From Octopus vulgaris (Eukaryota), in contig OX597823.1 in assembly GCA_951406725.2 (NCBI GenBank), positions 116,870,001 to 116,934,000 of the forward strand: a stretch of DNA of 64,000 nt. The letters run 5' to 3'. The translations under genes were made by a program, and so were the position numbers. The notes below the pieces were generated by a model. The model was not told the DNA's origin, did no database searches, and was given only the letters and a program-made list of their open reading frames with translations. Shown one piece after another: positions 4,294-62,872 of the stretch. The stretch's first letter is position 1; each line of letters begins with the position of its first letter.

Positions 4294-5165
4294 CATCATC
4301 GTCGTCGTCGTCGTCATCATCATCATCATCATCATCATTATTATCATTATATATTTTTTGTTTGATTTCCATTTTATTTCATCCTCCAGCTAGATCTTAA
4401 CCCCTATCAAAGTCACTTTCCACATTCACAAAGATGTATACTGAGGAGAATCATGCTGAGACACTGGACAACCCTATGTTCTTTGTCCAAGTCATATGCT
4501 CATCGTTATGACAACAGCAGACCTGCAGACAAATCACTTTGCCCTGTTCATTTCTGTTACTTTACATTCTTAGTTCAAAATTTTGCTTGAGTCAACTTTG
4601 GCTTGTATTTCTCTATCATCAGTATAATCAACTGCTATCTTGTTTGGTCATGTTTTTACAGTATTCTTATATTTATTGCATATTTTCACTGCACCGCTGA
4701 GTGCAGTTCTGTGCACCTAGGATATTCACAATGTTTGTTTTGTCTTGTATTGAAATAACTTTAAGTATTATTGTGTGTTGTGCAGTATCTAGCTGTATAT
4801 AGTATCTATAAATTGATTTAAAAGTAGAGCATGTGAGTGTGTGTGTGCATGCATGTATATGTGTGCATGTGTTATATACATACACACACATACATACACT
4901 CACCACAAACACACATGCATGCACAAGGGATATATATATATGTATATATATATGATAGAAATATTAAAATAACTAAGTCTCTCTAAAAGAGAACAGCGGC
5001 AGCGTTCCCGGAAAATAATAGTTATCGCCATACTAATATGGCATTCTTATAAAAATAAGAAAAAAGCTGTCCGCTTATTAGCTCCATGAGGCCATCGCCT
5101 TAAGTTAGCTATTTGATACACAAACTGTATCCATATAACCTTCGAACAAGGGAGGTCAGTCGCTC

Positions 5166-5243
5166 CACACTACTTGACCGGCAGCTACAGACGCGTTTCG
5201 GAGTATTGCCCCTTTTCAATGCAGCGTAGCCAGCCAGTAGGTG
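5166..5243 (-). ncRNA. Type I hammerhead ribozyme, U3-A8 core variant (copy 1)
   Basis: GCUGCA-UUGAAAA-GGGG(CAAUA)CUCC-GAAA-CGCG-UC-UGUAGC. Stem I extends past a UAC/U internal loop via CUGGC/GCCGG, GG/UC, CUACU/AGUAG and CAC/GUG. Predicted GUC cleavage between 5190 and 5189. Confidence 0.85.
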
Positions 5244-5527
5244 TCGCTTCCGACAATCTCTGTTCGATGGTTTTATTTACCTAGTTTCGGTGGAATACAT
5301 CCACTTGTTTTCAATAATAGAAATATTAAAATAACTAAGTCTCTCTAAAAGAGAACAGCGGCAGCGTTCCCGGAAAATAATAGTTATCGCCATACTAATA
5401 TGGCATTCTTATAAAAATAAGAAAAAAGCTGTCCGCTTATTAGCTCCATGAGGCCATCGCCTTAAGTTAGCTATTTGATACACAAACTGTATCCATATAA
5501 CCTTCGAACAAGGGAGGTCAGTCGCTC

Positions 5528-5605
5528 CACACTACTTGACCGGCAGCTACAGACGCGTTTCGGAGTATTGCCCCTTTTCAATGCAGCGTAGCCAGCCAGT
5601 AGGTG
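5528..5605 (-). ncRNA. Type I hammerhead ribozyme (copy 2)
   Basis: Same sequence as copy 1, offset +362. Confidence 0.85.
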
Positions 5606-5889
5606 TCGCTTCCGACAATCTCTGTTCGATGGTTTTATTTACCTAGTTTCGGTGGAATACATCCACTTGTTTTCAATAATAGAAATATTAAAATAACTAA
5701 GTCTCTCTAAAAGAGAACAGCGGCAGCGTTCCCGGAAAATAATAGTTATCGCCATACTAATATGGCATTCTTATAAAAATAAGAAAAAAGCTGTCCGCTT
5801 ATTAGCTCCATGAGGCCATCGCCTTAAGTTAGCTATTTGATACACAAACTGTATCCATATAACCTTCGAACAAGGGAGGTCAGTCGCTC

Positions 5890-5967
5890 CACACTACTTG
5901 ACCGGCAGCTACAGACGCGTTTCGGAGTATTGCCCCTTTTCAATGCAGCGTAGCCAGCCAGTAGGTG
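5890..5967 (-). ncRNA. Type I hammerhead ribozyme (copy 3)
   Basis: Same sequence as copy 1, offset +724. Confidence 0.85.
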
Positions 5968-6251
5968 TCGCTTCCGACAATCTCTGTTCGATGGTTTTAT
6001 TTACCTAGTTTCGGTGGAATACATCCACTTGTTTTCAATAATAGAAATATTAAAATAACTAAGTCTCTCTAAAAGAGAACAGCGGCAGCGTTCCCGGAAA
6101 ATAATAGTTATCGCCATACTAATATGGCATTCTTATAAAAATAAGAAAAAAGCTGTCCGCTTATTAGCTCCATGAGGCCATCGCCTTAAGTTAGCTATTT
6201 GATACACAAACTGTATCCATATAACCTTCGAACAAGGGAGGTCAGTCGCTC

Positions 6252-6329
6252 CACACTACTTGACCGGCAGCTACAGACGCGTTTCGGAGTATTGCCCCTT
6301 TTCAATGCAGCGTAGCCAGCCAGTAGGTG
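6252..6329 (-). ncRNA. Type I hammerhead ribozyme (copy 4)
   Basis: Same sequence as copy 1, offset +1086. Confidence 0.85.
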
Positions 6330-6613
6330 TCGCTTCCGACAATCTCTGTTCGATGGTTTTATTTACCTAGTTTCGGTGGAATACATCCACTTGTTTTCAA
6401 TAATAGAAATATTAAAATAACTAAGTCTCTCTAAAAGAGAACAGCGGCAGCGTTCCCGGAAAATAATAGTTATCGCCATACTAATATGGCATTCTTATAA
6501 AAATAAGAAAAAAGCTGTCCGCTTATTAGCTCCATGAGGCCATCGCCTTAAGTTAGCTATTTGATACACAAACTGTATCCATATAACCTTCGAACAAGGG
6601 AGGTCAGTCGCTC

Positions 6614-6691
6614 CACACTACTTGACCGGCAGCTACAGACGCGTTTCGGAGTATTGCCCCTTTTCAATGCAGCGTAGCCAGCCAGTAGGTG
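6614..6691 (-). ncRNA. Type I hammerhead ribozyme (copy 5)
   Basis: Same sequence as copy 1, offset +1448. The sixth copy is cut at 7009, just upstream of GAAA. Confidence 0.85.
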
Positions 6692-7225
6692 TCGCTTCCG
6701 ACAATCTCTGTTCGATGGTTTTATTTACCTAGTTTCGGTGGAATACATCCACTTGTTTTCAATAATAGAAATATTAAAATAACTAAGTCTCTCTAAAAGA
6801 GAACAGCGGCAGCGTTCCGGAAAATAATAGTTATCGCCATACTAATATGGCATTCTTATAAAAATAAGAAAAAAGCTGTCCGCTTATTAGCTCCATGAGG
6901 CCATCGCCTTAAGTTAGCTATTTGATACACAAACTGTATCCATATAACCTTCGAACAAGGGAGGTCAGTCGCTCCACACTACTTGACCGGCAGCTACAGA
7001 CGCGTTTCGAAGGTTATATGGATACAGTTTGTGTATCAAATAGCTAACTTAAGGCGATGGCCTCATGGAGCTAATAAGCGGACAGCTTTTTTCTTATTTT
7101 TATAAGAATGCCATATTAGTATGGCGATAACTATATATATATGTATATACATATAAAAGGGATGACCTGTAAGTGGACATTCATCATGCTTTGCCACTAA
7201 GAAAGGAATGTTCTCAAGAAAAGTT

Positions 7226-7400
7226 CTTGCTTGACAACCGATGGTGGTGTGTTTGTGTCCCCATAACTTAACGGTTTGGCAAAAGAGACCGATAGAATAA
7301 GTACTAGGCTTACAAATAATAAGTCCTGGGGTCGATTTGCTCGACTAAATGGCGGTGCTCCAGCATGGCCACAGTCAAATGACTGAAACAAGTAAAAGAG
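7226..7400 (+). mobile_element. tRNA-SINE family A, 3' half
   Basis: cttgacaaccgatg..gatagaataagtactaggcttac..ccagcatggccacagtcaaatgactgaaacaagtaaaag. Confidence 0.85.
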
Positions 7401-7890
7401 TATTTACTTACTGTCTTTTATATTGTCAAACTTTTAAGCTTTATAAAGTCAGCACCTCATGTTTAACATGGTCAACATTGATTGGGTTGGGTTGACTTGT
7501 GGACTCCCCCTCTCTCTCTCTCTTTCTCTCTCCCTCTCTTTCTCTCTCTCTCTCAACTTATCTTTCACATTCTCACTCTACCTCTTTCCCTCTCTGTCAT
7601 CTTTCTCTCACATTCCCTCCAGTCAAACTTCATCCATATCTATATAGCACATATCTGCATCTGTTCCTATCAAATAAGCATTTATTTACATCCTATTTAA
7701 GTTAGCTGACAATGAAGATTGTGCTTAATCCTGTCAATATTTTCAAGCCACTCTTCTTTATCAAATCTGTATCTGCAGCTAGTTTGCATCTAGTCAGTGC
7801 ATATCATTACACCAATATTATTCTAATACACTGGTTATATCTTCTGATCCTGATACAAAATAATATAACACTTATATACTAAACCACAAA

Positions 7891-19370: not shown

Positions 19371-19767
19371 GGTGCAGGAGTGGCTGTGTGGTGAGTATCT
19401 TGCTTACCAACCACATGGTTCCGGGTTCATTCGTTGGGCGAGTGTCTTCTACTATAGCCTTGGGCCGACCAAAGCATAGTGAGTGGATTTGGTTGATGGA
19501 AACTGAAAGAAGCCCGTCGTATATATATATATATATGTGTATGAGTGTGTGTATGTTTGTGTGTCTATGTTTGTCCCCCCAACATCACTTGACAACCAAT
19601 GCTGGTGTGTTTACATCCCCATAACTTAGCAGTCCGGCAAAAGAGACCGATAGAATAAGTACTGGGCTTACAAAGAATAAGTCCTGTGGTCAATTTGCTC
19701 GACTAAAGGCTGTGCTCCAGCATGGCCACAGTCAAATGACTGAAACAAGTGAAAGAGTAAAAGAGTA
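19371..19767 (+). mobile_element. tRNA-SINE family A, full length
   Basis: Same head, core and tail as 10364-10740. Confidence 0.9.
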
Positions 19768-36294: not shown

Positions 36295-36512
36295 TACTCT
36301 TTACTCTTTCACTTGTTTCAGTCATTTGACTGTGGCCATGCTGGAGCACCACATTTAGTTGAGAAAATCGACCCTAGGACTTATTCTTTGTAAGCTTAGT
36401 ACTTATTGTATTGATCTCTTTTGCCAAACTGCTAAGTTACGAGGACATAAGCACACCAGCATCGGTTGTCAAGTGATGTTGGGGGGACAAACACACACAC
36501 AAACATATACAG

Positions 36513-37793: not shown

Positions 37794-37852
37794 ATTCTAG
37801 ATCCCGGATTTCTGGCTTTGCATTTAGTAATGCTTTGCCTCGTCAGTAGAAT
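37794..37852 (-). ncRNA. Type I hammerhead-like motif in an ~210-bp TA-flanked insert
   Basis: AUUCUA-CUGACGA-GGC(AAA GCAUU ACUA AAUGC AAA)GCC-A-GAAA-UCC G GGA-UC-UAGAAU: perfect 6-bp stem I, AUC triplet, one extra A before G12. Confidence 0.6.
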
Positions 37853-42509: not shown

Positions 42510-44052
42510 GGGGTAATATTGAAAGAGGGGGTAATATGCCCTTATCCATAAGGGAGGTAGCAGAGCAGATGCTAAAAATTATAGGCCTATCTCTCTGACC
42601 TCACACATCAGCAAAGTCATGGAACGAATAGTCCATAAGAAACTAATCATGTTCTTTGAAGAAAATGACTTGCTGTCTGACACCCAGCATGGATTTCGAC
42701 CAGGTAGAGGCTGCCTAACACAGCTTCTGCAACACTATGACTGGGTGTTGAAACAGCTACTAAATGGCTCAAATGTGGATGTAATATATCTCGACTTTGC
42801 AAAAGCCTTTGATAAAGTTGACCATGGTATGATCTGTCACAAACTGCGTGGTCTCGGCATAGGCGGAAAACTTGGAGAGTGGCTGCACAACTTCCTAAAA
42901 GACAGAAAACAGGCAGTTGTGAGCAATGGAGCCACCTCCAAGGAAACGCAAATAACAAGCGGTGTCCCACAGGGCACTGTCTTGGGGCCACTGATGTTCA
43001 TAGTGGCCCTTTCAGACATGCCTTCAGTTGCTACGATGACCACCCTTGCTAGCTATGCAGATGACACAAAAGTCTCCCACGCAATACAAAAACCTGAAAA
43101 TATTGCGCATCTGCAACATGAGCTGGACACAATATACAGGTGGTCTGAGGACAACAACATGCAGTTTAATGCAGGTAAGTTCCAGGCCCTGTGCTACTGG
43201 CACACAAAGGTAAACGACGTGAAGACTGGATACACTGGCCCAGGAAGAATTGCAATCCCTGAGTCAAAATCAGTGCGTGACCTGGGCATTGACATGAGCA
43301 ATGATGCATCTTTCCAAGAGCATATTACTAATCTGGTGATAAAATGCAGACGGCTAGCTGGATGGATTCTCCGAACTTTCAGAACAAGAGAGAAGGAGAC
43401 ACTGATGGTCCTATGGAAAACATTCGTCCTCAGCCACTTGGACTACTGCTCCCAACTGTGGTCACCACACAATATAAAACTAACAGCAGAACTCGAAGCA
43501 ATTCAGAGAAGCTACACAAAGAAAATCGTCTCAATGCAAAATATCAGCTACTGGGAAAGACTGAAGGTATTAAACCTCTTCTCCCTAGAGCGGAGGCAGG
43601 AGAGATATGCGGTGATATACATCTGGAAAATCCTGGAGGGTCTTGTCCCAAACTTTGGCATTCAAAGTTACCCCAACCGCAGAACGGGGCGCCACTGCAT
43701 GGTGCCAAGGATTCCAACATCACCATCAAAATACAGGTCCAGATACTGCAACAGCTTGGGTTTCAGAGGAACACAGCTCTTTAACATCCTCCCTAAATGC
43801 CTGAGAGACTTACATGGTGTGGATGTGGGTTTCTTTAAAACTAAACTGGATCTCTTCTTGTTGGGAGTCCCAGATGAACCTACCTCACGACAGAAGACGC
43901 GGATGCGAGCAGCAGCATCGAACTCCCTTGTTGATCAAGTGCCACATATCAGAGGTGGATTCACAAATTAGTGTAGCTCATTCAGCGGTGGTGCCCCAGC
44001 ATGGCCGCGGCCTTCGGGCTAATACATTTTTAAGGATTTAAGGATTTAAGGA
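42510..44052 (+). mobile_element. 5'-truncated CR1/L2-like LINE
   Basis: RT ORF, short 3' UTR with a stem-loop, and (aaggattt)x3 tail. Confidence 0.9.
42619..43971 (+). CDS. Reverse transcriptase (ORF2 C-terminal part) of CR1/L2-like LINE, uninterrupted
   Basis: QHGFRPGR, YLDFAKAFDKV, GVPQGTVLGPLMF, YADD, VRDLG, LDYCS. The frame also runs upstream from about 42535 (IHKGG..NYRPISLTS). Confidence 0.9.
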   Translation: MERIVHKKLIMFFEENDLLSDTQHGFRPGRGCLTQLLQHYDWVLKQLLNGSNVDVIYLDFAKAFDKVDHGMICHKLRGLGIGGKLGEWLHNFLKDRKQAVVSNGATSKETQITSGVPQGTVLGPLMFIVALSDMPSVATMTTLASYADDTKVSHAIQKPENIAHLQHELDTIYRWSEDNNMQFNAGKFQALCYWHTKVNDVKTGYTGPGRIAIPESKSVRDLGIDMSNDASFQEHITNLVIKCRRLAGWILRTFRTREKETLMVLWKTFVLSHLDYCSQLWSPHNIKLTAELEAIQRSYTKKIVSMQNISYWERLKVLNLFSLERRQERYAVIYIWKILEGLVPNFGIQSYPNRRTGRHCMVPRIPTSPSKYRSRYCNSLGFRGTQLFNILPKCLRDLHGVDVGFFKTKLDLFLLGVPDEPTSRQKTRMRAAASNSLVDQVPHIRGGFTN

Positions 44053-44056
44053 TATA

Positions 44057-44120
<64 letters not shown>

Positions 44121-44261
44121 TATATGAATATATATATGTGTATATTTATGTATATATATATATATATATATTATATATATGAATATATATATGTGTGTAT
44201 ATTTATGTATATATATATGTATATATATGTATATGTATGTATATATATATGTATGTATATG

Positions 44262-44294
<33 letters not shown>

Positions 44295-44305
44295 GTATAT
44301 ATATG

Positions 44306-44368
<63 letters not shown>

Positions 44369-44492
44369 GTATGTATATATATGTATATATGTATGTATAT
44401 GTGTATGTATATATATATATATGTATGTATATATATGTATATATGTATGTATGTATATATATATGTATATATGTATTATGTATATATATATG

Positions 44493-44543
<51 letters not shown>

Positions 44544-44559
44544 ATATATATATATATAT

Positions 44560-44602
<43 letters not shown>

Positions 44603-44662
44603 AGTGTATATATATATGTATGTGTATATATATATATATGTATGTGTATATATATGTATGTG

Positions 44663-44697
<35 letters not shown>

Positions 44698-44910
44698 ATA
44701 TATATATATATGTATATATGTGTATATATATATATGTATATATGTGTATATATATATGTATGTATATATGTGTGTATATATATATGTGTATATATAGATA
44801 TATATATATATATGTATATATGTGTATATATATATATATATGTATATATGTGTATATATATATGTGTATATATAGATATATATATAGATATATATATATA
44901 TATATGAATA

Positions 44911-47050
44911 TATGTATATGGAGCAAAGTACCATCTCGACCCAGAGTAACGTGGTGGTGGAACACTGTGGTTGACAGGGCTATTAGACAAAAGAGACAGG
45001 CTTGGAAGGACTGGAAGAACGGTGGTAGCAGTGAATTGTATCAGACAGCCAAAAGGGAAGCTAGGAGACAGGTTTATTTAGCCAGAGGGGAAGCGGATAA
45101 GAAAAAATTTGCCAATGTTCTGAGCCGTGAGGATGAAAGACTTGAGGTATTTCGTGTTGCAAGACAGTGTGTGAGAGAGAATCGTGATGTGGTAGGAGAG
45201 AAGTGTGTTTGCATGGATGATGGTTCACTTGCGCTAAATGAGGATGCAAAGAGAGAGGTTTGGAGATGCCACTATGAAAGGTTGCTGAATAAAGAAAATG
45301 AATGGGATAAAGAGAGTCTGCCGAATGTTGACCCAACAGAGGGACCAGCTATCCGAGTTGATAGTTCCATGGTAGCTAAGGCAATTAGAAGCATGAAGAC
45401 AGGGAAAGCCCCAGGCCCATCAGGAATTACTGCAGAGATGCTCAAAATATCTGGTAGTGTCGGCTATAACCTAGTCACCCGTATAGTCAACCAGGTGATA
45501 CACGAAGGAGTCATACCCAATGACTGGTGTAGCAGCATACTAGTCAACTACTACAAAGGTAAAGGTGATGCCCTAGATACAAATAATTACAGAGGTATCA
45601 AGCTGTTGGATCAGGTAATGAAGGTTACGGAGAGGGTCATAGCCCAACTGATTAGGGAGAGAGTCAACTTGGACGAGATGCAGTTTGGTTTCGTGCCAGG
45701 GAAAGTACTACTGATGCCATATTTCTGGTGAGACAGCTGCAGGAGAAATACCTAGCCAAAGATAAGCCCCTGTACCTGGCTTCCGTTGACATGGAGAAAG
45801 CCTTTGACAGGGTTCCCTAATCTCTTATCTGGTGGTCAATGAGGAAACTAGGGATAGATGAATGGCTGGTGAGGGCTGTGCAAGCCATGTACAGAGATGC
45901 CGTAAGTAAGGTTAGAGTTGGCAACATGTACACAGAAGAATTCAAAGTAGAGGTTGGGGTCCACCAGGGTTCAGTACTCAGCCCCCTCCTATTTATCATA
46001 GTCCTCCAGGCAATTGTGGAGGAATTCAAGACAGGTTGCCCCTGGGAGCTCCTCTATGCTGACGACCTCGCTCTAATTGCTGAGTCACTATCAGAACTGG
46101 AGGAGAAGTTCCAGGTGTGGAAGGAGGGTTTAGAATCGAGGGGCCTTAGAGTCAACCTAGCTAAAACCAAAGTACTAATAAGTAGAAAGGTAGACAATCC
46201 ACAAATATCCTCAGGAAGATGGCCCTGCTCGATCTGTAGAAAAGGTGTAGGTAGAAACTCTTTAAGATGTACCCAGTGTAAGCTATGGACACATAAGAGG
46301 TGCAGCAATGTCAAAGGTAGGCTAACTGGGAAGATAGTTTTTGCATGTGGCAGATGCTCTGGAGCATTGACCTCCGAAAATCTGCAGAAAACAACTTCCG
46401 TCACTTTCCGGGGGAAAAACTAGAAGTAGTTGATAGCTTCCGCTATCTAGGTGACCAAGTCAGTAGTGGGGGTGGGTGCGCTGAAAGTGTAACTGCTAGA
46501 ATAAGAATAGCCTGGGCAAAGTTTAGGGAGCTCTTACCTCTGCTGGTGACTAAAGGCCTCTCGCTCAGAGTAAAAGGCAGACTGTATGATGCATGTGTAC
46601 GAACAGCTATGCTACATGGCAGTGAAACATGGGCCGTGACTGCTGAGGACATGCGTAAGCTCGTGAGGAACGAAGCCAGTATACTCCGATGGATGTGTAA
46701 TGTCAGTGTACTTACTCGACAGAGCGTTAGCACCTTGAGAGAAATGTTGTACCTAAGAAGCATCAGTTGTGGTGTGCAAGAGAGACGATTGCGCTGGTAT
46801 GGTCATGTGGCGAGAATGGATGAAGATAGGTGTGTGAGAAAGTGCCAATCCCTAGCAGTTGAGGGAACCCGTGGAAGAGGTAGACCCAGGAAAACCTGGG
46901 ACGAGGTGGTGAAGCACGACCTTCGGACGTTAGGTCTCACCATGGAAATGACTAGAGACCGAGACCTATGGAAGTATGCTGTGCTTGAGAAGACCCGGCA
47001 TAGAGACTGAGACCTATGGAAGTATGCTGTGCGTGAGAAGACCCGGCAAG
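44911..47050 (+). pseudogene. RTE RT ORF with frameshifts near 45705 and 46410 and a stop at about 45818; contains a PHD finger at 46226-46357
   Basis: Track ORFs 44604-45731, 45839-46423 and 46345-47010 join into one RTE ORF. C4HC3 pattern CSIC..CTQC..H..C..CGRC. Confidence 0.85.
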
Positions 47051-49636: not shown

Positions 49637-49681
49637 TTAACACGTTTCAGCTGATATACCCTCCAGCCTTCTTCAGGTGTA
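49637..49681 (-). ncRNA. Degenerate HHR of the same family (left arm)
   Basis: CUGAAGA-A-GGCUG..CAGCU-GAAACGUG; a short deletion destroys the cleavage triplet and stem I. Confidence 0.5.
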
Positions 49682-49742
49682 TTGGGGAAATTTCGAACCT
49701 GGCTTCTCATTCCTAAAGTATTTGTTGTTGTTATTATTATTA

Positions 49743-49788
<46 letters not shown>

Positions 49789-49881
49789 CAGGTCACTGCC
49801 TGTAATCGAACACGGAATCTTGGAGTTAAGAGTGCGGGTACTAACCCCAAGATTCCGAGTTCGATTCCATGCAGTGACCTG

Positions 49882-49915
<34 letters not shown>

Positions 49916-49983
49916 GTAATAATAACAACAACAACATTGAAAAATACCTTAGGAATGCGAATCCAGGTTCGAAATTTCCCCAA

Positions 49984-50029
49984 GACACCTGATGAAGGCT
50001 GGAGAGTACATCAGCTGAAACGTTGTGTT
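49984..50029 (+). ncRNA. Minimal type I hammerhead ribozyme
   Basis: GACAC-CUGAUGA-A-GGCUG(GAGAGUACAU)CAGCU-GAAA-CG-UU-GUGUU; palindromic stem III AACGUU; GUU triplet. Confidence 0.75.
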
Positions 50030-50296
50030 AGCGTCAAACAAGATGAGGACAAATATCGTCAAATGTAAATAATGTAAATAATGTACATAATTCCTCATCT
50101 CTTAAATATATATTTGTATTATAATAGTAGCAGTAAATAATTATATAAGTGTTCAACCCAAATTTAGCCCTCATATAGCTGGCCTGTAGTCAAAGAGGTT
50201 CTAGCTACGGCTATTTAGTCACAGTATATCAAGAGCTGTTATTATTCAATATGCCCTTACCATTTTTAAGACAGTAGAATGTGACACAAGTCACCA

Positions 50297-51225
50297 TCAT
50301 CATCATCATTATCATCATCATTCCGTTTTCCATGATGGCATGGGTTGGATGGTTTGAATGGAGATGGTAAGCTAGAGAGCTGCACCAGGCTCCAGTCTCT
50401 TTGGCCTGGTTTCTATGGCTGGATGCCCGTCCTAACACCAACCACTCCACAGAGTGTACTGGGTGCCTTTTATGTGTCGCCAACACAAGTGCCATTCACG
50501 TGTCACTGGCACTAGGCCATGATTATGATTTCACTTAGCATGAAGCATCTTCTCTAGCACAGCAATTTGCCAAAAGTCCCAGTGACTTGTCATCTCTGTG
50601 AGGCTCAACATCTGAAGATCATATTTCACTATCTAATCCCACGTCTTTCTTGTTCAACTTCTTCCACAGGTTCCTTCCACAATTAGGGATCAGTAATTCT
50701 TTATGCAGCTGTCCTTGTCCAGCCTGAACAAACATACAGAAGCTCCCTTATTGAATTTATTGGCAACTGGTTAAATAGTAGAAAATTATAAATAAATAAA
50801 TACATCTGTTTCATAACATATTTTCTACTTAAGCCACATAATTCTACTTAAGCACCATGACTCACAGTGTTGTAGGAAGGAGAACTACTAAACAATTTAT
50901 CACCCTGTATAGGCATAGGAGTGGCTGTGTGGTAAGTGGCTTGCTCACCAACCACATGGTTCCAGGTTCAGTCCCACTGCTTGGCACATTAGGCAAGTGT
51001 CTTCTACTATAGCCTCAGGCCAACCAAAGCCTTGTGAGTGGATTTGGTAGATGGAAACTACTGGTGTGTTTAGGTCCCCGTAACTTAGCGGTTTGACAAA
51101 AGAGACTGATAGAATAAGTACTAGGATTACAAAGAATAAGTCCTGGGGTCGATTTGCTCGACTAAAGGCGGTGCTCCAGCATGGCCACGGTCAAATGACT
51201 GAAACAAGTAAAAGAGAGTAAAAGA
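50297..51225. mobile_element. RTE tail (50297-50520, -) and internally deleted family A SINE (50911-51225, +)
   Basis: Family motifs as above. Confidence 0.8.
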
Positions 51226-59096: not shown

Positions 59097-60014
59097 CATA
59101 CATACACACACATATATATATATATGCAAGTGTCCTCTACTATAGACTTGGGACAACCAAAGCCTTGTGAGTGGAATTGGTTGACGGAAACTGAAAGAAG
59201 CCTGTCGTATATATGTGTATATATGTGTGTGTGTATGTGTTTGTGTGTCTGTATCCCCCCCCCCCAACATCACTTGACAACTGATGCTGGTGTATTTACA
59301 TTCCTGTAACTTAGCTGTTCGGCAAAAGACACTGATAGAATAAGTACTAGGCATACAAAGAATAAGTCCTGGGGTCGATTTGCTCGACTAAAGGCAATGC
59401 TCCAGCATGGCCACAGTCAAATGACTGAAACAAGTAAAAGAGTAAAAGAGCAAAGTGTATGTGTGTACACAAAGACTTACACACATACATGCATACATGA
59501 ATATATATATATACATACATATATATGTATGAATGTGTGTGTGGCTATGTGTGTATAAAAGTGGGTTTGGAGGGATATATTATCTGGGAAGATACCGTAT
59601 CAGCTCTCAGTTGAGTTCCAGTTAATGGCTAACCACAGTGATCAGTATTTATGTCTGTGACTACAAATTGCTGTTAGTCACTCGGTGAATCCTTCTGATG
59701 GGTAATTTCGTGTACTCTTTGCTGAAGCAGGAATATGTATGGGTGATTATAATATGCTGTATATAACTATAAAATAAATTCTGTGGATGTACTCTTTATT
59801 ATAAACATTTATATACATAGGTGCAGGAGTGGCTGTATGGTAAGTAGCTTGCTTACCAATCACATGGTTCTGGGTTCAGTCCCACTGCATGGCACCTTGG
59901 GCAAGTGTCTTCTACTATAGCCACGGGCTAACCAGAGCCTTGTGAGTGTATTTAGTAGACAGAAACTAAAGGAAGCCTGTCGTATGAATATATATGTATA
60001 TATATATATATTTA

Positions 60015-62482: not shown

Positions 62483-62872
62483 GGCTGTGTGGTAAGTAGC
62501 TTGCTTACCAACCACATGGTTCCGGGTTCCGGATTCAGTCCCACCTCGGGCAAGTGTCTTCTACTATAGCCTCGGGCCAACCAAAGCCTTGTGAGTGGAT
62601 TTGGTAGACGGAAACTGAAAGAAACCCGTCGTATATATGTATATGTATATATGTATGTGTGTGTGTATATGTTTGGTGTCTGTGTTTGTCCCCCCAACAT
62701 TGCTTGACAACCGATGCTGGTGTATTTACGTCCCTGTAACTTAGCAGTTTGGCAAAAGAGACCGATAGAATAAATACTAGGCTTACAAAGAATAAGTCCT
62801 GGGGTCAATTTGCTTGATTAAAGGCGGTGCTCCAGCATGACCACAGTCAAATGACTGAAACAAGTAAAAAGA
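62483..62872 (+). mobile_element. tRNA-SINE family A, full length
   Basis: Head, core, internal microsatellite and tail are all present. Confidence 0.9.

What the first reader, a model, noticed from the sequence alone, without database searches (positions are those of the whole stretch)
4955..7134. Young 5.7 x 362-bp hammerhead array: candidate octopus-type retrozyme producing 362-nt circRNA
Seen: essentially identical 362-bp units (one 1-bp indel), one HHR per unit on the minus strand, no ORF, TA microsatellite flanks, and array ends that do not coincide with the cleavage site. Known: non-LTR retrozymes and PLE pLTRs are tandem HHR repeats that self-cleave to monomers which can circularise, and minimal HHRs with palindromic stem III (here ACGCGU) work as dimers. 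Inference: a multimer transcript would be cut into 362-nt monomers, and the array looks like a rolling-circle reverse transcript of such a circle, mobilised in trans by PLE RT. I cannot tell from here whether this family is already catalogued.
Basis: partly seen in the sequence, partly recalled or inferred. Interest (0 to 1): 0.9.

Follow-up and report, generated by a model that had tools for sequence, protein, structure and literature searches.

The report
Octopod hammerhead tandem repeat (retrozyme)
A very young, non-coding 362-bp tandem repeat in an octopod genome carries one variant hammerhead ribozyme per unit and was inserted the way Penelope-like retroelements insert, so it is a new member of the known "non-LTR retrozyme" class, not a new kind of element.

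Summary
Positions 4955-7009 are 5.7 direct copies of a 362-bp unit: five are 100% identical and the sixth has a 1-bp deletion.

Each full unit carries a type I hammerhead on the minus strand, with predicted cleavage at 5190/5189 and every 362 nt after. Its core is not canonical: it reads UUGAAAA, a U3-A8 pair in place of C3-G8, and Rfam finds nothing. Three results still support it:
- A literature-style descriptor hits only these five sites and none in 38 Mb of shuffles.
- A covariance model built only from four experimentally cleaving retrozyme hammerheads scores them 32.8 bits (E~2e-7).
- U3-A8 is a published natural variant in Penelope-like element (PLE) hammerheads.

Other features fit non-LTR retrozymes mobilised by PLE machinery: helix III is a single A-U pair closing a palindromic CGCG tetraloop, the dimer-dependent axolotl type. 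The unit has no ORF over 38 aa and 41% GC, sits in a (TA)n target, and has an inverted 5'-truncated copy at the sense 5' end.

Self-cleavage, circular RNA, copy number and the source of reverse transcriptase are untested. Verdict: new member of a known kind, moderate interest.

The parts
4934..4953 (.). Left TA-rich flank (ATATATATGTATATATATAT), a possible target-site duplication; one G at 4954 separates it from the array
   Evidence: It matches 7135-7154 in direct orientation at 19/20. More than 250 sites in the window lie within one mismatch of this 20-mer, so a duplication cannot be proven.
4955..7009 (-). Direct tandem array, 5.68 x 362 bp; the hammerhead (sense) strand is the minus strand
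   Evidence: TRF; self-BLAST shows five units 100% identical; GC 41.4%; the unit RNA folds with z = -6.3; longest ORF 38 aa.
5168..5241 (-). Hammerhead 1 with extended helix I. The core motif is 5184-5225: GCUGCA|UUGAAAA|GGGG-CAAUA-CUCC|GAAA|CGCG|UC^|UGUAGC. Cleavage is predicted between 5190 and 5189.
   Evidence: Descriptor hit; covariance model R1 32.8 bits, E~2e-7, full length, all pairs standard; helices I and II appear in the minimum-free-energy fold.
5546..5587 (-). Hammerhead 2 core motif, cleavage predicted at 5552/5551
5908..5949 (-). Hammerhead 3 core motif, cleavage predicted at 5914/5913
6270..6311 (-). Hammerhead 4 core motif, cleavage predicted at 6276/6275
6632..6673 (-). Hammerhead 5 core motif, cleavage predicted at 6638/6637
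6993..7009 (-). Truncated sixth hammerhead: only CGAAACGCGUC^UGUAGC remains; the UUGAAAA box and helix II are missing
   Evidence: Sequence; GAAACGCGTC match with C17 at 6999; no covariance-model or descriptor hit.
6817..6818 (.). The only difference among units: CC here versus CCC in the other five units (1-bp deletion in a homopolymer)
7006..7009 (.). TTCG microhomology at the junction between the direct array and the inverted copy
   Evidence: Junction alignment.
7006..7134 (+). Inverted, 5'-truncated partial unit that reads as sense RNA on the + strand. It is a perfect reverse complement of unit positions 64-192. With 6827-6955 it forms a 129-bp perfect inverted repeat around a 50-nt spacer.
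   Evidence: the repeat finder I1-I6, 129 nt, 100% complementary; BLAST.
7135..7154 (.). Right TA-rich flank (ATATATATGTATATACATAT), a possible target-site duplication

Best explanation
This is one recent insertion of a non-autonomous, non-coding retroelement of the metazoan non-LTR retrozyme class, in an octopod genome.

Shown by sequence:
- A head-to-tail array of identical 362-bp units.
- A complete type I hammerhead on the minus strand of each full unit. It has the canonical metazoan architecture, but the C3-G8 core pair is replaced by U3-A8. Helix III is reduced to one A-U pair closing the palindromic tetraloop CGCG.
- An insertion in a (TA)n microsatellite, with an inverted 5'-truncated copy at the sense 5' end.

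Inferred:
- A minus-strand transcript through the array pairs neighbouring hammerheads through ACGCGU/ACGCGU into double hammerheads.
- It cleaves after each GUC. Five sites give four 362-nt monomers: 6637-6276, 6275-5914, 5913-5552 and 5551-5190.
- A host RtcB-type ligase circularises the monomers.
- A reverse transcriptase supplied in trans, most likely from a Penelope-like element, copies the circle or a multimer round and round, starting from a nicked (TA)n target.

The two outer ends of the insertion both start at a CUAU|UAUU site of the RNA, but 63 nt apart in the unit. This fits two cDNAs primed internally from the two target ends (twin priming) and joined at TTCG. It does not fit a linear RNA with one fixed 3' end.
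For: Array and identity:
-.

Hammerhead:
- The descriptor gives 5 hits in the array, 0 elsewhere in the window, and 0 in 300 dinucleotide shuffles (38 Mb), even when relaxed.
- Covariance model R1 was built only from coral Amil224, mussel Mg353 and axolotl Ax353/Ax330 retrozyme hammerheads (sequences from the supplement of PMC7229834). It gives 32.8 bits, E~2e-7, full length, with no non-standard pair. The next hit scores 17.6 bits.
- Segment lengths are identical to the mussel hammerhead, with different but pairing helix sequences.
- A UAC bulge lies 5' of a 6-bp helix I and loop 2 reads CAAUA. The Schistosoma Sm1-derived N79 ribozyme has GUAC and CAAAUA at the same places.
- U3-A8 covariation is reported in about 1,300 Schistosoma PLE hammerheads (PMC4209133). 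C3-G8 is a Watson-Crick pair (PMC3884650).

Dimer:
- The axolotl hammerhead with a single-pair helix III and palindromic tetraloop cleaves 6% as a monomer and efficiently as a dimer (PMC7229834).
- The cofold of two copies forms the 6-bp intermolecular helix III: -63.7 versus 2 x -28.8 kcal/mol.

Class features (PMC7229834; bioRxiv 10.64898/2026.07.22.740005):
[quoted passage not shown] All are met.

PLE-style insertion:
- Partial tandems, an inverted 5'-truncated copy at the 5' end, and (TA)n bias are described in PMC8557442 and are seen here.

Reverse transcriptase source:
- Octopus vulgaris has 30 recently active Penelope families (PMC13282606).
- The window holds two other hammerhead-like motifs of PLE type.
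- The window is octopod: its best named reverse-transcriptase relatives are from Argonauta hians.
Against: - No Rfam hammerhead model matches, even at E<=10 on an 81-nt slice.
- The core departs from the consensus at two positions. The activity of a U3-A8 core in this context is unmeasured, and published PLE mini-hammerheads cleave poorly in vitro.
- My descriptor was written after seeing the motif. The covariance model is independent, but it rests on four sequences and a shortened calibration.
- Only one locus is known. There is no second copy in the window, none in viral, metagenome or prokaryote contigs, and no ORF-level trace in the protein collections. Mobility and copy number are therefore unshown.
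- There is no PLE ORF in the window. The two reverse-transcriptase remnants are LINE-like.
- The target-site duplication is not provable in a TA microsatellite.
- Perfect identity of five units could also reflect assembly collapse or polishing.
Confidence: 0.74

Rival explanations
1. It is a 5'-truncated tandem of the terminal repeat (pLTR) of an autonomous Penelope-like element. On this view the array is debris of PLE insertion, not an independent non-autonomous family with its own circular-RNA cycle.
For: PLE insertions are typically partial tandems with inverted 5'-truncated copies in (TA)n, and they carry hammerheads in their pLTRs. Xenopus retrozymes are sister to PLE pLTRs.
Against: Five complete identical 362-bp units with no ORF sequence at all are not what 5' truncation of a 3-4 kb element gives. 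The two outer ends lie at different unit positions, which argues against a fixed 3' end. The hammerhead is of the canonical tertiary-stabilised retrozyme type, not the PLE minimal type. There is no PLE ORF nearby.
Confidence: 0.12
2. It is an ordinary local satellite or minisatellite, amplified at the DNA level by unequal exchange or replication slippage. The hammerhead is an inherited relic, and there is no RNA-mediated mobility.
For: There is a single locus only. Perfect homogeneity can also come from very recent DNA-level amplification. The core is non-canonical and Rfam is negative.
Against: DNA-level amplification does not explain the inverted 129-nt terminal copy joined by microhomology. 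It also does not explain both outer ends lying at CUAU|UAUU sites inside a (TA)n tract. The two core changes are exactly the compensatory pair while every other core position and all 10 helix I/II pairs are intact, which is not the pattern of decay.
Confidence: 0.08
3. It is an assembly artefact. The unit is real, but the copy number, the perfect identity or the inverted end were produced by assembly or polishing of repetitive reads.
For: Five units have zero differences. The only difference is a homopolymer length, a typical long-read error. PLE tandem/inverted structures are known to trouble assemblies.
Against: The inverted segment is offset by a 50-nt spacer and ends in unique flanking sequence, unlike a missed-adapter palindrome. 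Both junctions are clean. This cannot be tested further here.
Confidence: 0.06

Closest known systems
Metazoan non-LTR retrozymes (Cervera & de la Pena 2020, PMC7229834), especially the Mytilus galloprovincialis Mg353 retrozyme
   Same: Both are non-coding, low-GC tandem units of about 350 nt in a mollusc. Each unit has one type I hammerhead with identical segment lengths: helix I 6 bp, helix II 4 bp, loop 2 5 nt. The 3' box is GAAAC-(CG)n-GUC^UG: mussel GAAACGCGCGUC^UGGCGU, here GAAACGCGUC^UGUAGC.
   Different: There is no sequence similarity outside the hammerhead. The core is U3-A8 instead of C3-G8. Helix III is shorter (CGCG versus CGCGCG). Expression and circles are shown for mussel and untested here.
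Axolotl/newt satellite-2 type hammerhead (HHR_Amex1, retrozyme Ax330)
   Same: Helix III is a single A-U pair capped by a palindromic tetraloop (CAUG there, CGCG here), which predicts weak monomer and efficient dimer cleavage. The unit size is similar (330 versus 362 nt).
   Different: The host is a vertebrate with about 10^5 copies and heterogeneous units. The core is the canonical C3-G8.
U3-A8 hammerhead variants of Schistosoma mansoni Cercyon PLEs (Cervera & de la Pena 2014, PMC4209133)
   Same: The same natural compensatory change of the C3-G8 core pair, in a PLE-associated hammerhead.
   Different: Those are minimal hammerheads (short helix I, long helix II, no helix III). They occur mostly as single dispersed motifs in PLE terminal repeats. 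Here the variant sits in a canonical-architecture hammerhead within a tandem retrozyme.
Penelope-like element insertions (Craig et al. 2021, PMC8557442)
   Same: Partial tandem organisation, an inverted 5'-truncated copy abutting the 5' end, and insertion into (TA)n microsatellites.
   Different: There is no RT/GIY-YIG ORF. The unit is only 362 nt, and the ends fall at two different internal positions of the unit.

Membership tests
Hammerhead ribozyme, type I | Three-way junction with open helix I, closed helices II and III, and an NUH cleavage triplet | tested here: met
   Helix I 6/6 pairs plus a distal extension. Helix II 4/4 pairs with G10.1-C11.1. Helix III is A15.1-U16.1 plus the palindromic CGCG. 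The cleavage triplet is GUC.
Hammerhead ribozyme, type I | Canonical core C3 U4 G5 A6 N7 G8 A9 / G12 A13 A14 | tested here: inconclusive
   The core is U3 U4 G5 A6 A7 A8 A9 / GAAA. Positions 3 and 8 both differ but keep a Watson-Crick pair. This covariation is a published natural variant (PMC4209133). Its activity in this context is unknown.
Hammerhead ribozyme, type I | Match to the curated Rfam hammerhead covariance models | tested here: not met
   No hammerhead hit at gathering score over the whole window. None at E<=10 on 4900-7200 or on the 81-nt slice 5165-5245.
Hammerhead ribozyme, type I | Match to a model of experimentally cleaving retrozyme hammerheads | tested here: met
   Model R1 (four validated sequences, none from this window) gives 32.8 bits, E~2e-7, positions 1-44 of 44, for all five copies. 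Window noise is 8-13 bits.
Hammerhead ribozyme, type I | Site-specific self-cleavage | not testable with these tools
   This needs in vitro transcription of monomer and dimer.
Non-LTR retrozyme | Tandem repeat of about 150-450 bp, with at least two consecutive units each holding a complete type I hammerhead | tested here: met
   Unit of 362 bp, with five consecutive complete motifs. The criterion is from the bioRxiv 2026 pipeline. It is met only if the U3-A8 core is accepted.
Non-LTR retrozyme | Non-coding, low GC, no LTR/PBS/PPT | tested here: met
   Longest ORF 38 aa. GC 41.4%. No terminal direct repeats other than the units themselves.
Non-LTR retrozyme | Transcribed; linear and circular monomer RNAs present | not testable with these tools
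   No transcriptome is accessible. Exact and homology look-ups of unit ORFs found nothing.
Non-LTR retrozyme | Dispersed multiple genomic copies (evidence of mobility) | tested here: inconclusive
   One locus in 64 kb. No match in the viral, metagenome or prokaryotic contig collections, none of which holds cephalopod genomes.
Penelope-like element (autonomous) | ORF with reverse transcriptase and GIY-YIG endonuclease | tested here: not met
   No ORF over 38 aa in 4955-7134. The window's reverse-transcriptase ORFs (42619-43971, 45839-46423) are LINE-like without GIY-YIG.
Penelope-like element (insertion signature) | Partial tandem plus inverted 5'-truncated copy at the 5' end; (TA)n target | tested here: met
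   searches compared with PMC8557442.

The most novel reading that the evidence does not exclude
This is a currently active cephalopod retrozyme family whose canonical-architecture hammerhead runs on a U3-A8 core pair. Rfam and CUGANGA-based retrozyme pipelines therefore cannot see it. This pristine insertion would also preserve the integration event itself: two cDNAs primed from the two ends of a (TA)n target at internal CUAU|UAUU sites 63 nt apart on the unit, then joined by 4-nt microhomology. That would be direct sequence evidence for rolling-circle reverse transcription of a circular RNA by PLE-type machinery, a step so far only hypothesised.
Probability: 0.3. Interest if true: 0.65.

Novelty: new member of a known kind. 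Interest (0 to 1): 0.45.

Why it matters
Retrozymes are a recently recognised source of abundant small circular RNAs in animals. No retrozyme paper I could search in the held library describes one in cephalopods.

This copy shows that a retrozyme hammerhead can carry the U3-A8 core variant, so surveys based on Rfam or the CUGANGA box will undercount such families. Because the insertion is unmutated, its junctions give unusually clean clues to how such elements integrate: internal priming at two different unit positions, a microhomology join, and an inverted 5'-truncated copy.

It also offers a natural substrate for testing the C3-G8 pair in a tertiary-stabilised hammerhead. None of this changes the known picture of the class.

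Tried and rejected
- Rfam at gathering score and at E<=10 on three nested ranges gave no hammerhead and no other ribozyme on either strand.
- I looked for a canonical CUGANGA box in the unit. The only CUGA (GCGACUGACC) has no hammerhead context.
- DNA pattern scans with the hammerhead, helix II left free and both core variants allowed, gave 0 matches in viral, metagenome and prokaryotic genome contigs.
- An exact look-up of the five unit ORFs in the 15-billion protein collection found none. A homology search with the longest stop-free stretch found none.
- MAFFT alignments that included the engineered N79 ribozyme or the octopod motif misplaced the helix III gaps. I used the four-sequence alignment A2 for the model and a hand-segmented comparison instead.
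- BLAST of the unit against the mussel and coral retrozymes found nothing beyond 9-10-nt words.
- A tRNA scan found none, so there is no evidence of a tRNA-SINE origin.
- Target-site duplication: the 19/20 direct match of the flanks is uninformative, because such TA 20-mers are abundant in the window.
- PLE coding sequence in the window: the reverse-transcriptase ORFs are LINE-like.
- My first attempt to enforce a double-hammerhead constraint in cofold was mis-specified and I ignored it. The unconstrained cofold already shows the intermolecular helix III.
Full report
**1. What is in the sequence**

Tandem Repeats Finder reports one array at 4955-7009: period 362, 5.7 copies, 99% matches. Self-BLAST shows five full units, starting at 4955, 5317, 5679, 6041 and 6403, that are 100% identical. 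A sixth partial unit differs only by a 1-bp deletion, CC at 6817-6818 instead of CCC.

It is a perfect 129-nt reverse complement of unit positions 64-192. It is joined to the direct array through a 4-nt overlap, TTCG.

The window holds no other copy of the unit. The unit has no ORF longer than 38 aa, or 55 aa from stop to stop. Its GC content is 41.4%. As RNA it folds far better than shuffled controls, with z = -6.3. The circular minimum-free-energy fold is -118.9 kcal/mol with 64% of bases paired.

**2. Is there a hammerhead?**

Rfam says no. There is no hit at gathering score in the window, none at E<=10 in 4900-7200, and none in the 81-nt slice 5165-5245.

Read by hand, the minus strand gives:

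CUGGC-UAC-GCUGCA | UUGAAAA | GGGG-CAAUA-CUCC | GAAA | CGCG | UC^ | UGUAGC-U-GCCGG

This is a type I hammerhead in every respect except that the CUGAUGA box reads UUGAAAA. Position 3 is U instead of C, and position 8 is A instead of G.

C3 and G8 form a Watson-Crick pair in the active fold (PMC3884650). The U3-A8 covariation has been described as a natural variant in about 1,300 hammerheads of Schistosoma Penelope-like elements (PMC4209133).

I ran two tests against chance:
- **Descriptor.** It follows the published architecture: helix I 6 bp; a [C/U]UGAN[G/A]A box with positions 3 and 8 paired; helix II 4 bp with G10.1-C11.1; GAAA; up to 10 nt of helix III; UH. It hits exactly the five full units and nothing else on either strand of the window. 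It gave no hits in 300 dinucleotide-preserving shuffles of the window (38 Mb), even with mismatches allowed. The descriptor was written after I had seen the motif.
- **Independent covariance model.** I built it only from the four retrozyme hammerheads whose self-cleavage was shown experimentally: coral Amil224, mussel Mg353, and axolotl Ax353 and Ax330. The sequences come from the supplement of PMC7229834, alignment A2, model R1. Searched over the whole window with filters off, the five array motifs score 32.8 bits (rough E about 2e-7). They align over all 44 model positions with no non-standard pair. The next hit scores 17.6 bits, and the noise lies at 8-13 bits.

Segment by segment, the octopod motif has the same lengths as the mussel hammerhead, with different helix sequences that still pair 6/6 and 4/4. 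The UAC bulge directly 5' of the 6-bp helix I and the CAAUA loop 2 sit where the Schistosoma Sm1-derived N79 ribozyme has GUAC and CAAAUA. From my own knowledge, those are the elements that make the loop-bulge tertiary contact in the Sm1 structure.

I conclude that the hammerhead is real as a motif. The Rfam failure is most plausibly due to the two core changes plus the minimal helix III, but I could not test that directly.

**3. Helix III and the dimer idea**

Between GAAA and UC lie only four nucleotides, CGCG. A monomer can therefore form a single A15.1-U16.1 pair closing a palindromic tetraloop.

This is the axolotl/newt architecture. Ax330 has CAUG there and cleaves 6% in an hour as a monomer, but efficiently in dimeric constructs (PMC7229834). 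The general argument is in PMC4209133.

An unconstrained cofold of two 74-nt hammerhead domains forms the 6-bp intermolecular ACGCGU/ACGCGU helix. Its energy is -63.7 kcal/mol, against 2 x -28.8 for the two monomers.

**4. How the insertion looks**

The array sits in a TA microsatellite. The 20 nt on either side (4934-4953 and 7135-7154) match 19/20 in direct orientation. Such TA 20-mers are so common in this window that a target-site duplication cannot be claimed. Craig et al. make the same point for PLEs.

In the sense (minus-strand) orientation, the inverted partial copy lies at the 5' end of the array and is itself 5'-truncated. Together with the tandem organisation and the (TA)n target, this is the published signature of Penelope-like element insertions (PMC8557442).

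Both outer ends of the insertion begin, reading inward, with ATAG. In other words, each corresponds to a CUAU|UAUU site in the sense RNA. The two sites are 63 nt apart in the unit, and neither is the hammerhead cleavage site.

A linear RNA with one defined 3' end would not give this pattern. Internal priming by the TA-rich target ends on a circular or multimeric template would. I read the structure as two cDNAs primed from the two target ends, analogous to L1 twin priming (from my own knowledge), and joined at TTCG.

A snap-back of the first cDNA onto the palindromic TTCGAA 50 nt upstream gives the same sequence and cannot be excluded.

The perfect identity of five units fits one reverse-transcription event on a single circle. 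It does not exclude a homogeneous multimeric transcript, very recent DNA-level amplification, or assembly smoothing.

**5. Predicted products**

The five complete hammerheads would cut a minus-strand transcript after C at 6638, 6276, 5914, 5552 and 5190. This releases four 362-nt monomers. Ligation by an RtcB-type ligase, as shown for other retrozymes, would give the circle. None of this is testable here.

**6. Context**

The best named relatives of a LINE-like reverse transcriptase in the window are Argonauta hians proteins at 60-62% identity, so the host is an octopod.

The window is repeat-rich:
- A SINE-like repeat of about 175 bp starts about 90 nt to the right of the array and has at least 13 further copies.
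- Two LINE-like reverse-transcriptase remnants lie at 42.6-47.0 kb. They have no GIY-YIG domain, so they are not PLEs.
- Two further hammerhead-like motifs of PLE type exist at 49985-50028 (+) and 37794-37852 (-).

Octopus vulgaris is reported to hold 30 recently active Penelope families (PMC13282606). A reverse-transcriptase source in trans is therefore plausible, but it was not identified.

**7. Comparison with what is known**

The element meets the operational definition of an active non-LTR retrozyme, which is a TRF array with at least two consecutive units holding a complete type I hammerhead. It also meets the descriptive features of the class given. This holds provided the U3-A8 core is accepted.

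It shares no sequence with the mussel or coral retrozymes outside the hammerhead. No retrozyme paper that I could search in the held library mentions cephalopods. I could not consult Repbase or Dfam.

It is best filed as a new member of a known kind. Two features are of note: the U3-A8 core in a canonical-architecture retrozyme hammerhead, and an unusually clean record of the insertion junctions.

**8. Verdict**

- **Observation:** confirmed, with three corrections: the inverted end, five rather than six complete hammerheads, and the non-canonical core.
- **Interpretation:** supported at the sequence level. Catalysis, circles, the template form and the reverse-transcriptase source are inferred.
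- **Confidence:** about 0.75 that this is a retrozyme-type, PLE-style insertion, and roughly even odds that it is catalytically and transpositionally active today.
- **Interest:** moderate, 0.45.

Noticed in passing
window 49640-50030: There is a second, unrelated hammerhead-like motif of the PLE minimal type on the + strand at 49985-50028: GACAC|CUGAUGA|A|GGCUGG..UCAGCU|GAAA|CG|UU^GUGUU. The chance expectation is 0.01 per window. A diverged inverted copy lies at about 49640-49705, with G at position 17. The two arms flank (ATT)n, a roughly 100-nt hairpin with a tRNA-like GTTCGATTCC box (49783-49887; only sub-threshold miRNA-like Rfam hits), and (AAT)n. It looks like two inverted PLE tails.
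   Followed up: partly
window 37794-37852 (minus strand): There is a third hammerhead-like motif: AUUCUA|CUGACGA|GGC...GCC|a|GAAA|UCCGGGA|UC^UAGAAU. It scores 17.6 bits with the retrozyme hammerhead model (E 0.008 in the window). It has a perfect 6-bp helix I but an extra A before GAAA, and it lies about 20 nt downstream of a TA microsatellite. It is possibly a truncated PLE tail.
   Followed up: partly
window 6827-6955 and 7006-7134: The inverted terminal copy and the last direct unit form a perfect 129-bp inverted repeat around a 50-nt spacer. Read-through transcripts of either strand would fold into a long perfect double-stranded hairpin. In a cephalopod this is a plausible substrate for A-to-I editing or small-RNA production, and a potentially unstable DNA palindrome.
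   Followed up: no
window 7227-7403 and at least 13 other sites (e.g. 19588-19759, 36302-36473, 51062-51216, 59273-59444, 62700-62869): A SINE-like repeat of about 175 bp occurs in many copies at 70-94% identity. One copy lies about 90 nt to the right of the array. Several weak (about 12-bit) hits of the hammerhead model fall at the start of these copies and are not hammerheads.
   Followed up: partly
window 42619-43971 and 44900-47010 (+): Two LINE-like reverse-transcriptase remnants (Pfam RVT_1; the second has a PHD-like zinc finger and frameshifts) are separated by an (AT)n tract of about 870 bp at 44052-44919. Their closest named relatives are Argonauta hians proteins. There is no GIY-YIG domain, so they are not Penelope-like elements.
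   Followed up: partly
each unit, e.g. window 5061-5066 (+ strand AAAAAA = sense-strand UUUUUU): The sense (hammerhead) strand of every unit contains a U6 run and a U5 run (GCUUUUUUCUUAUUUUUAUAAG). These would act as RNA polymerase III terminators, so multimeric sense transcripts are more likely made by polymerase II or by read-through. This is inference only.
   Followed up: no
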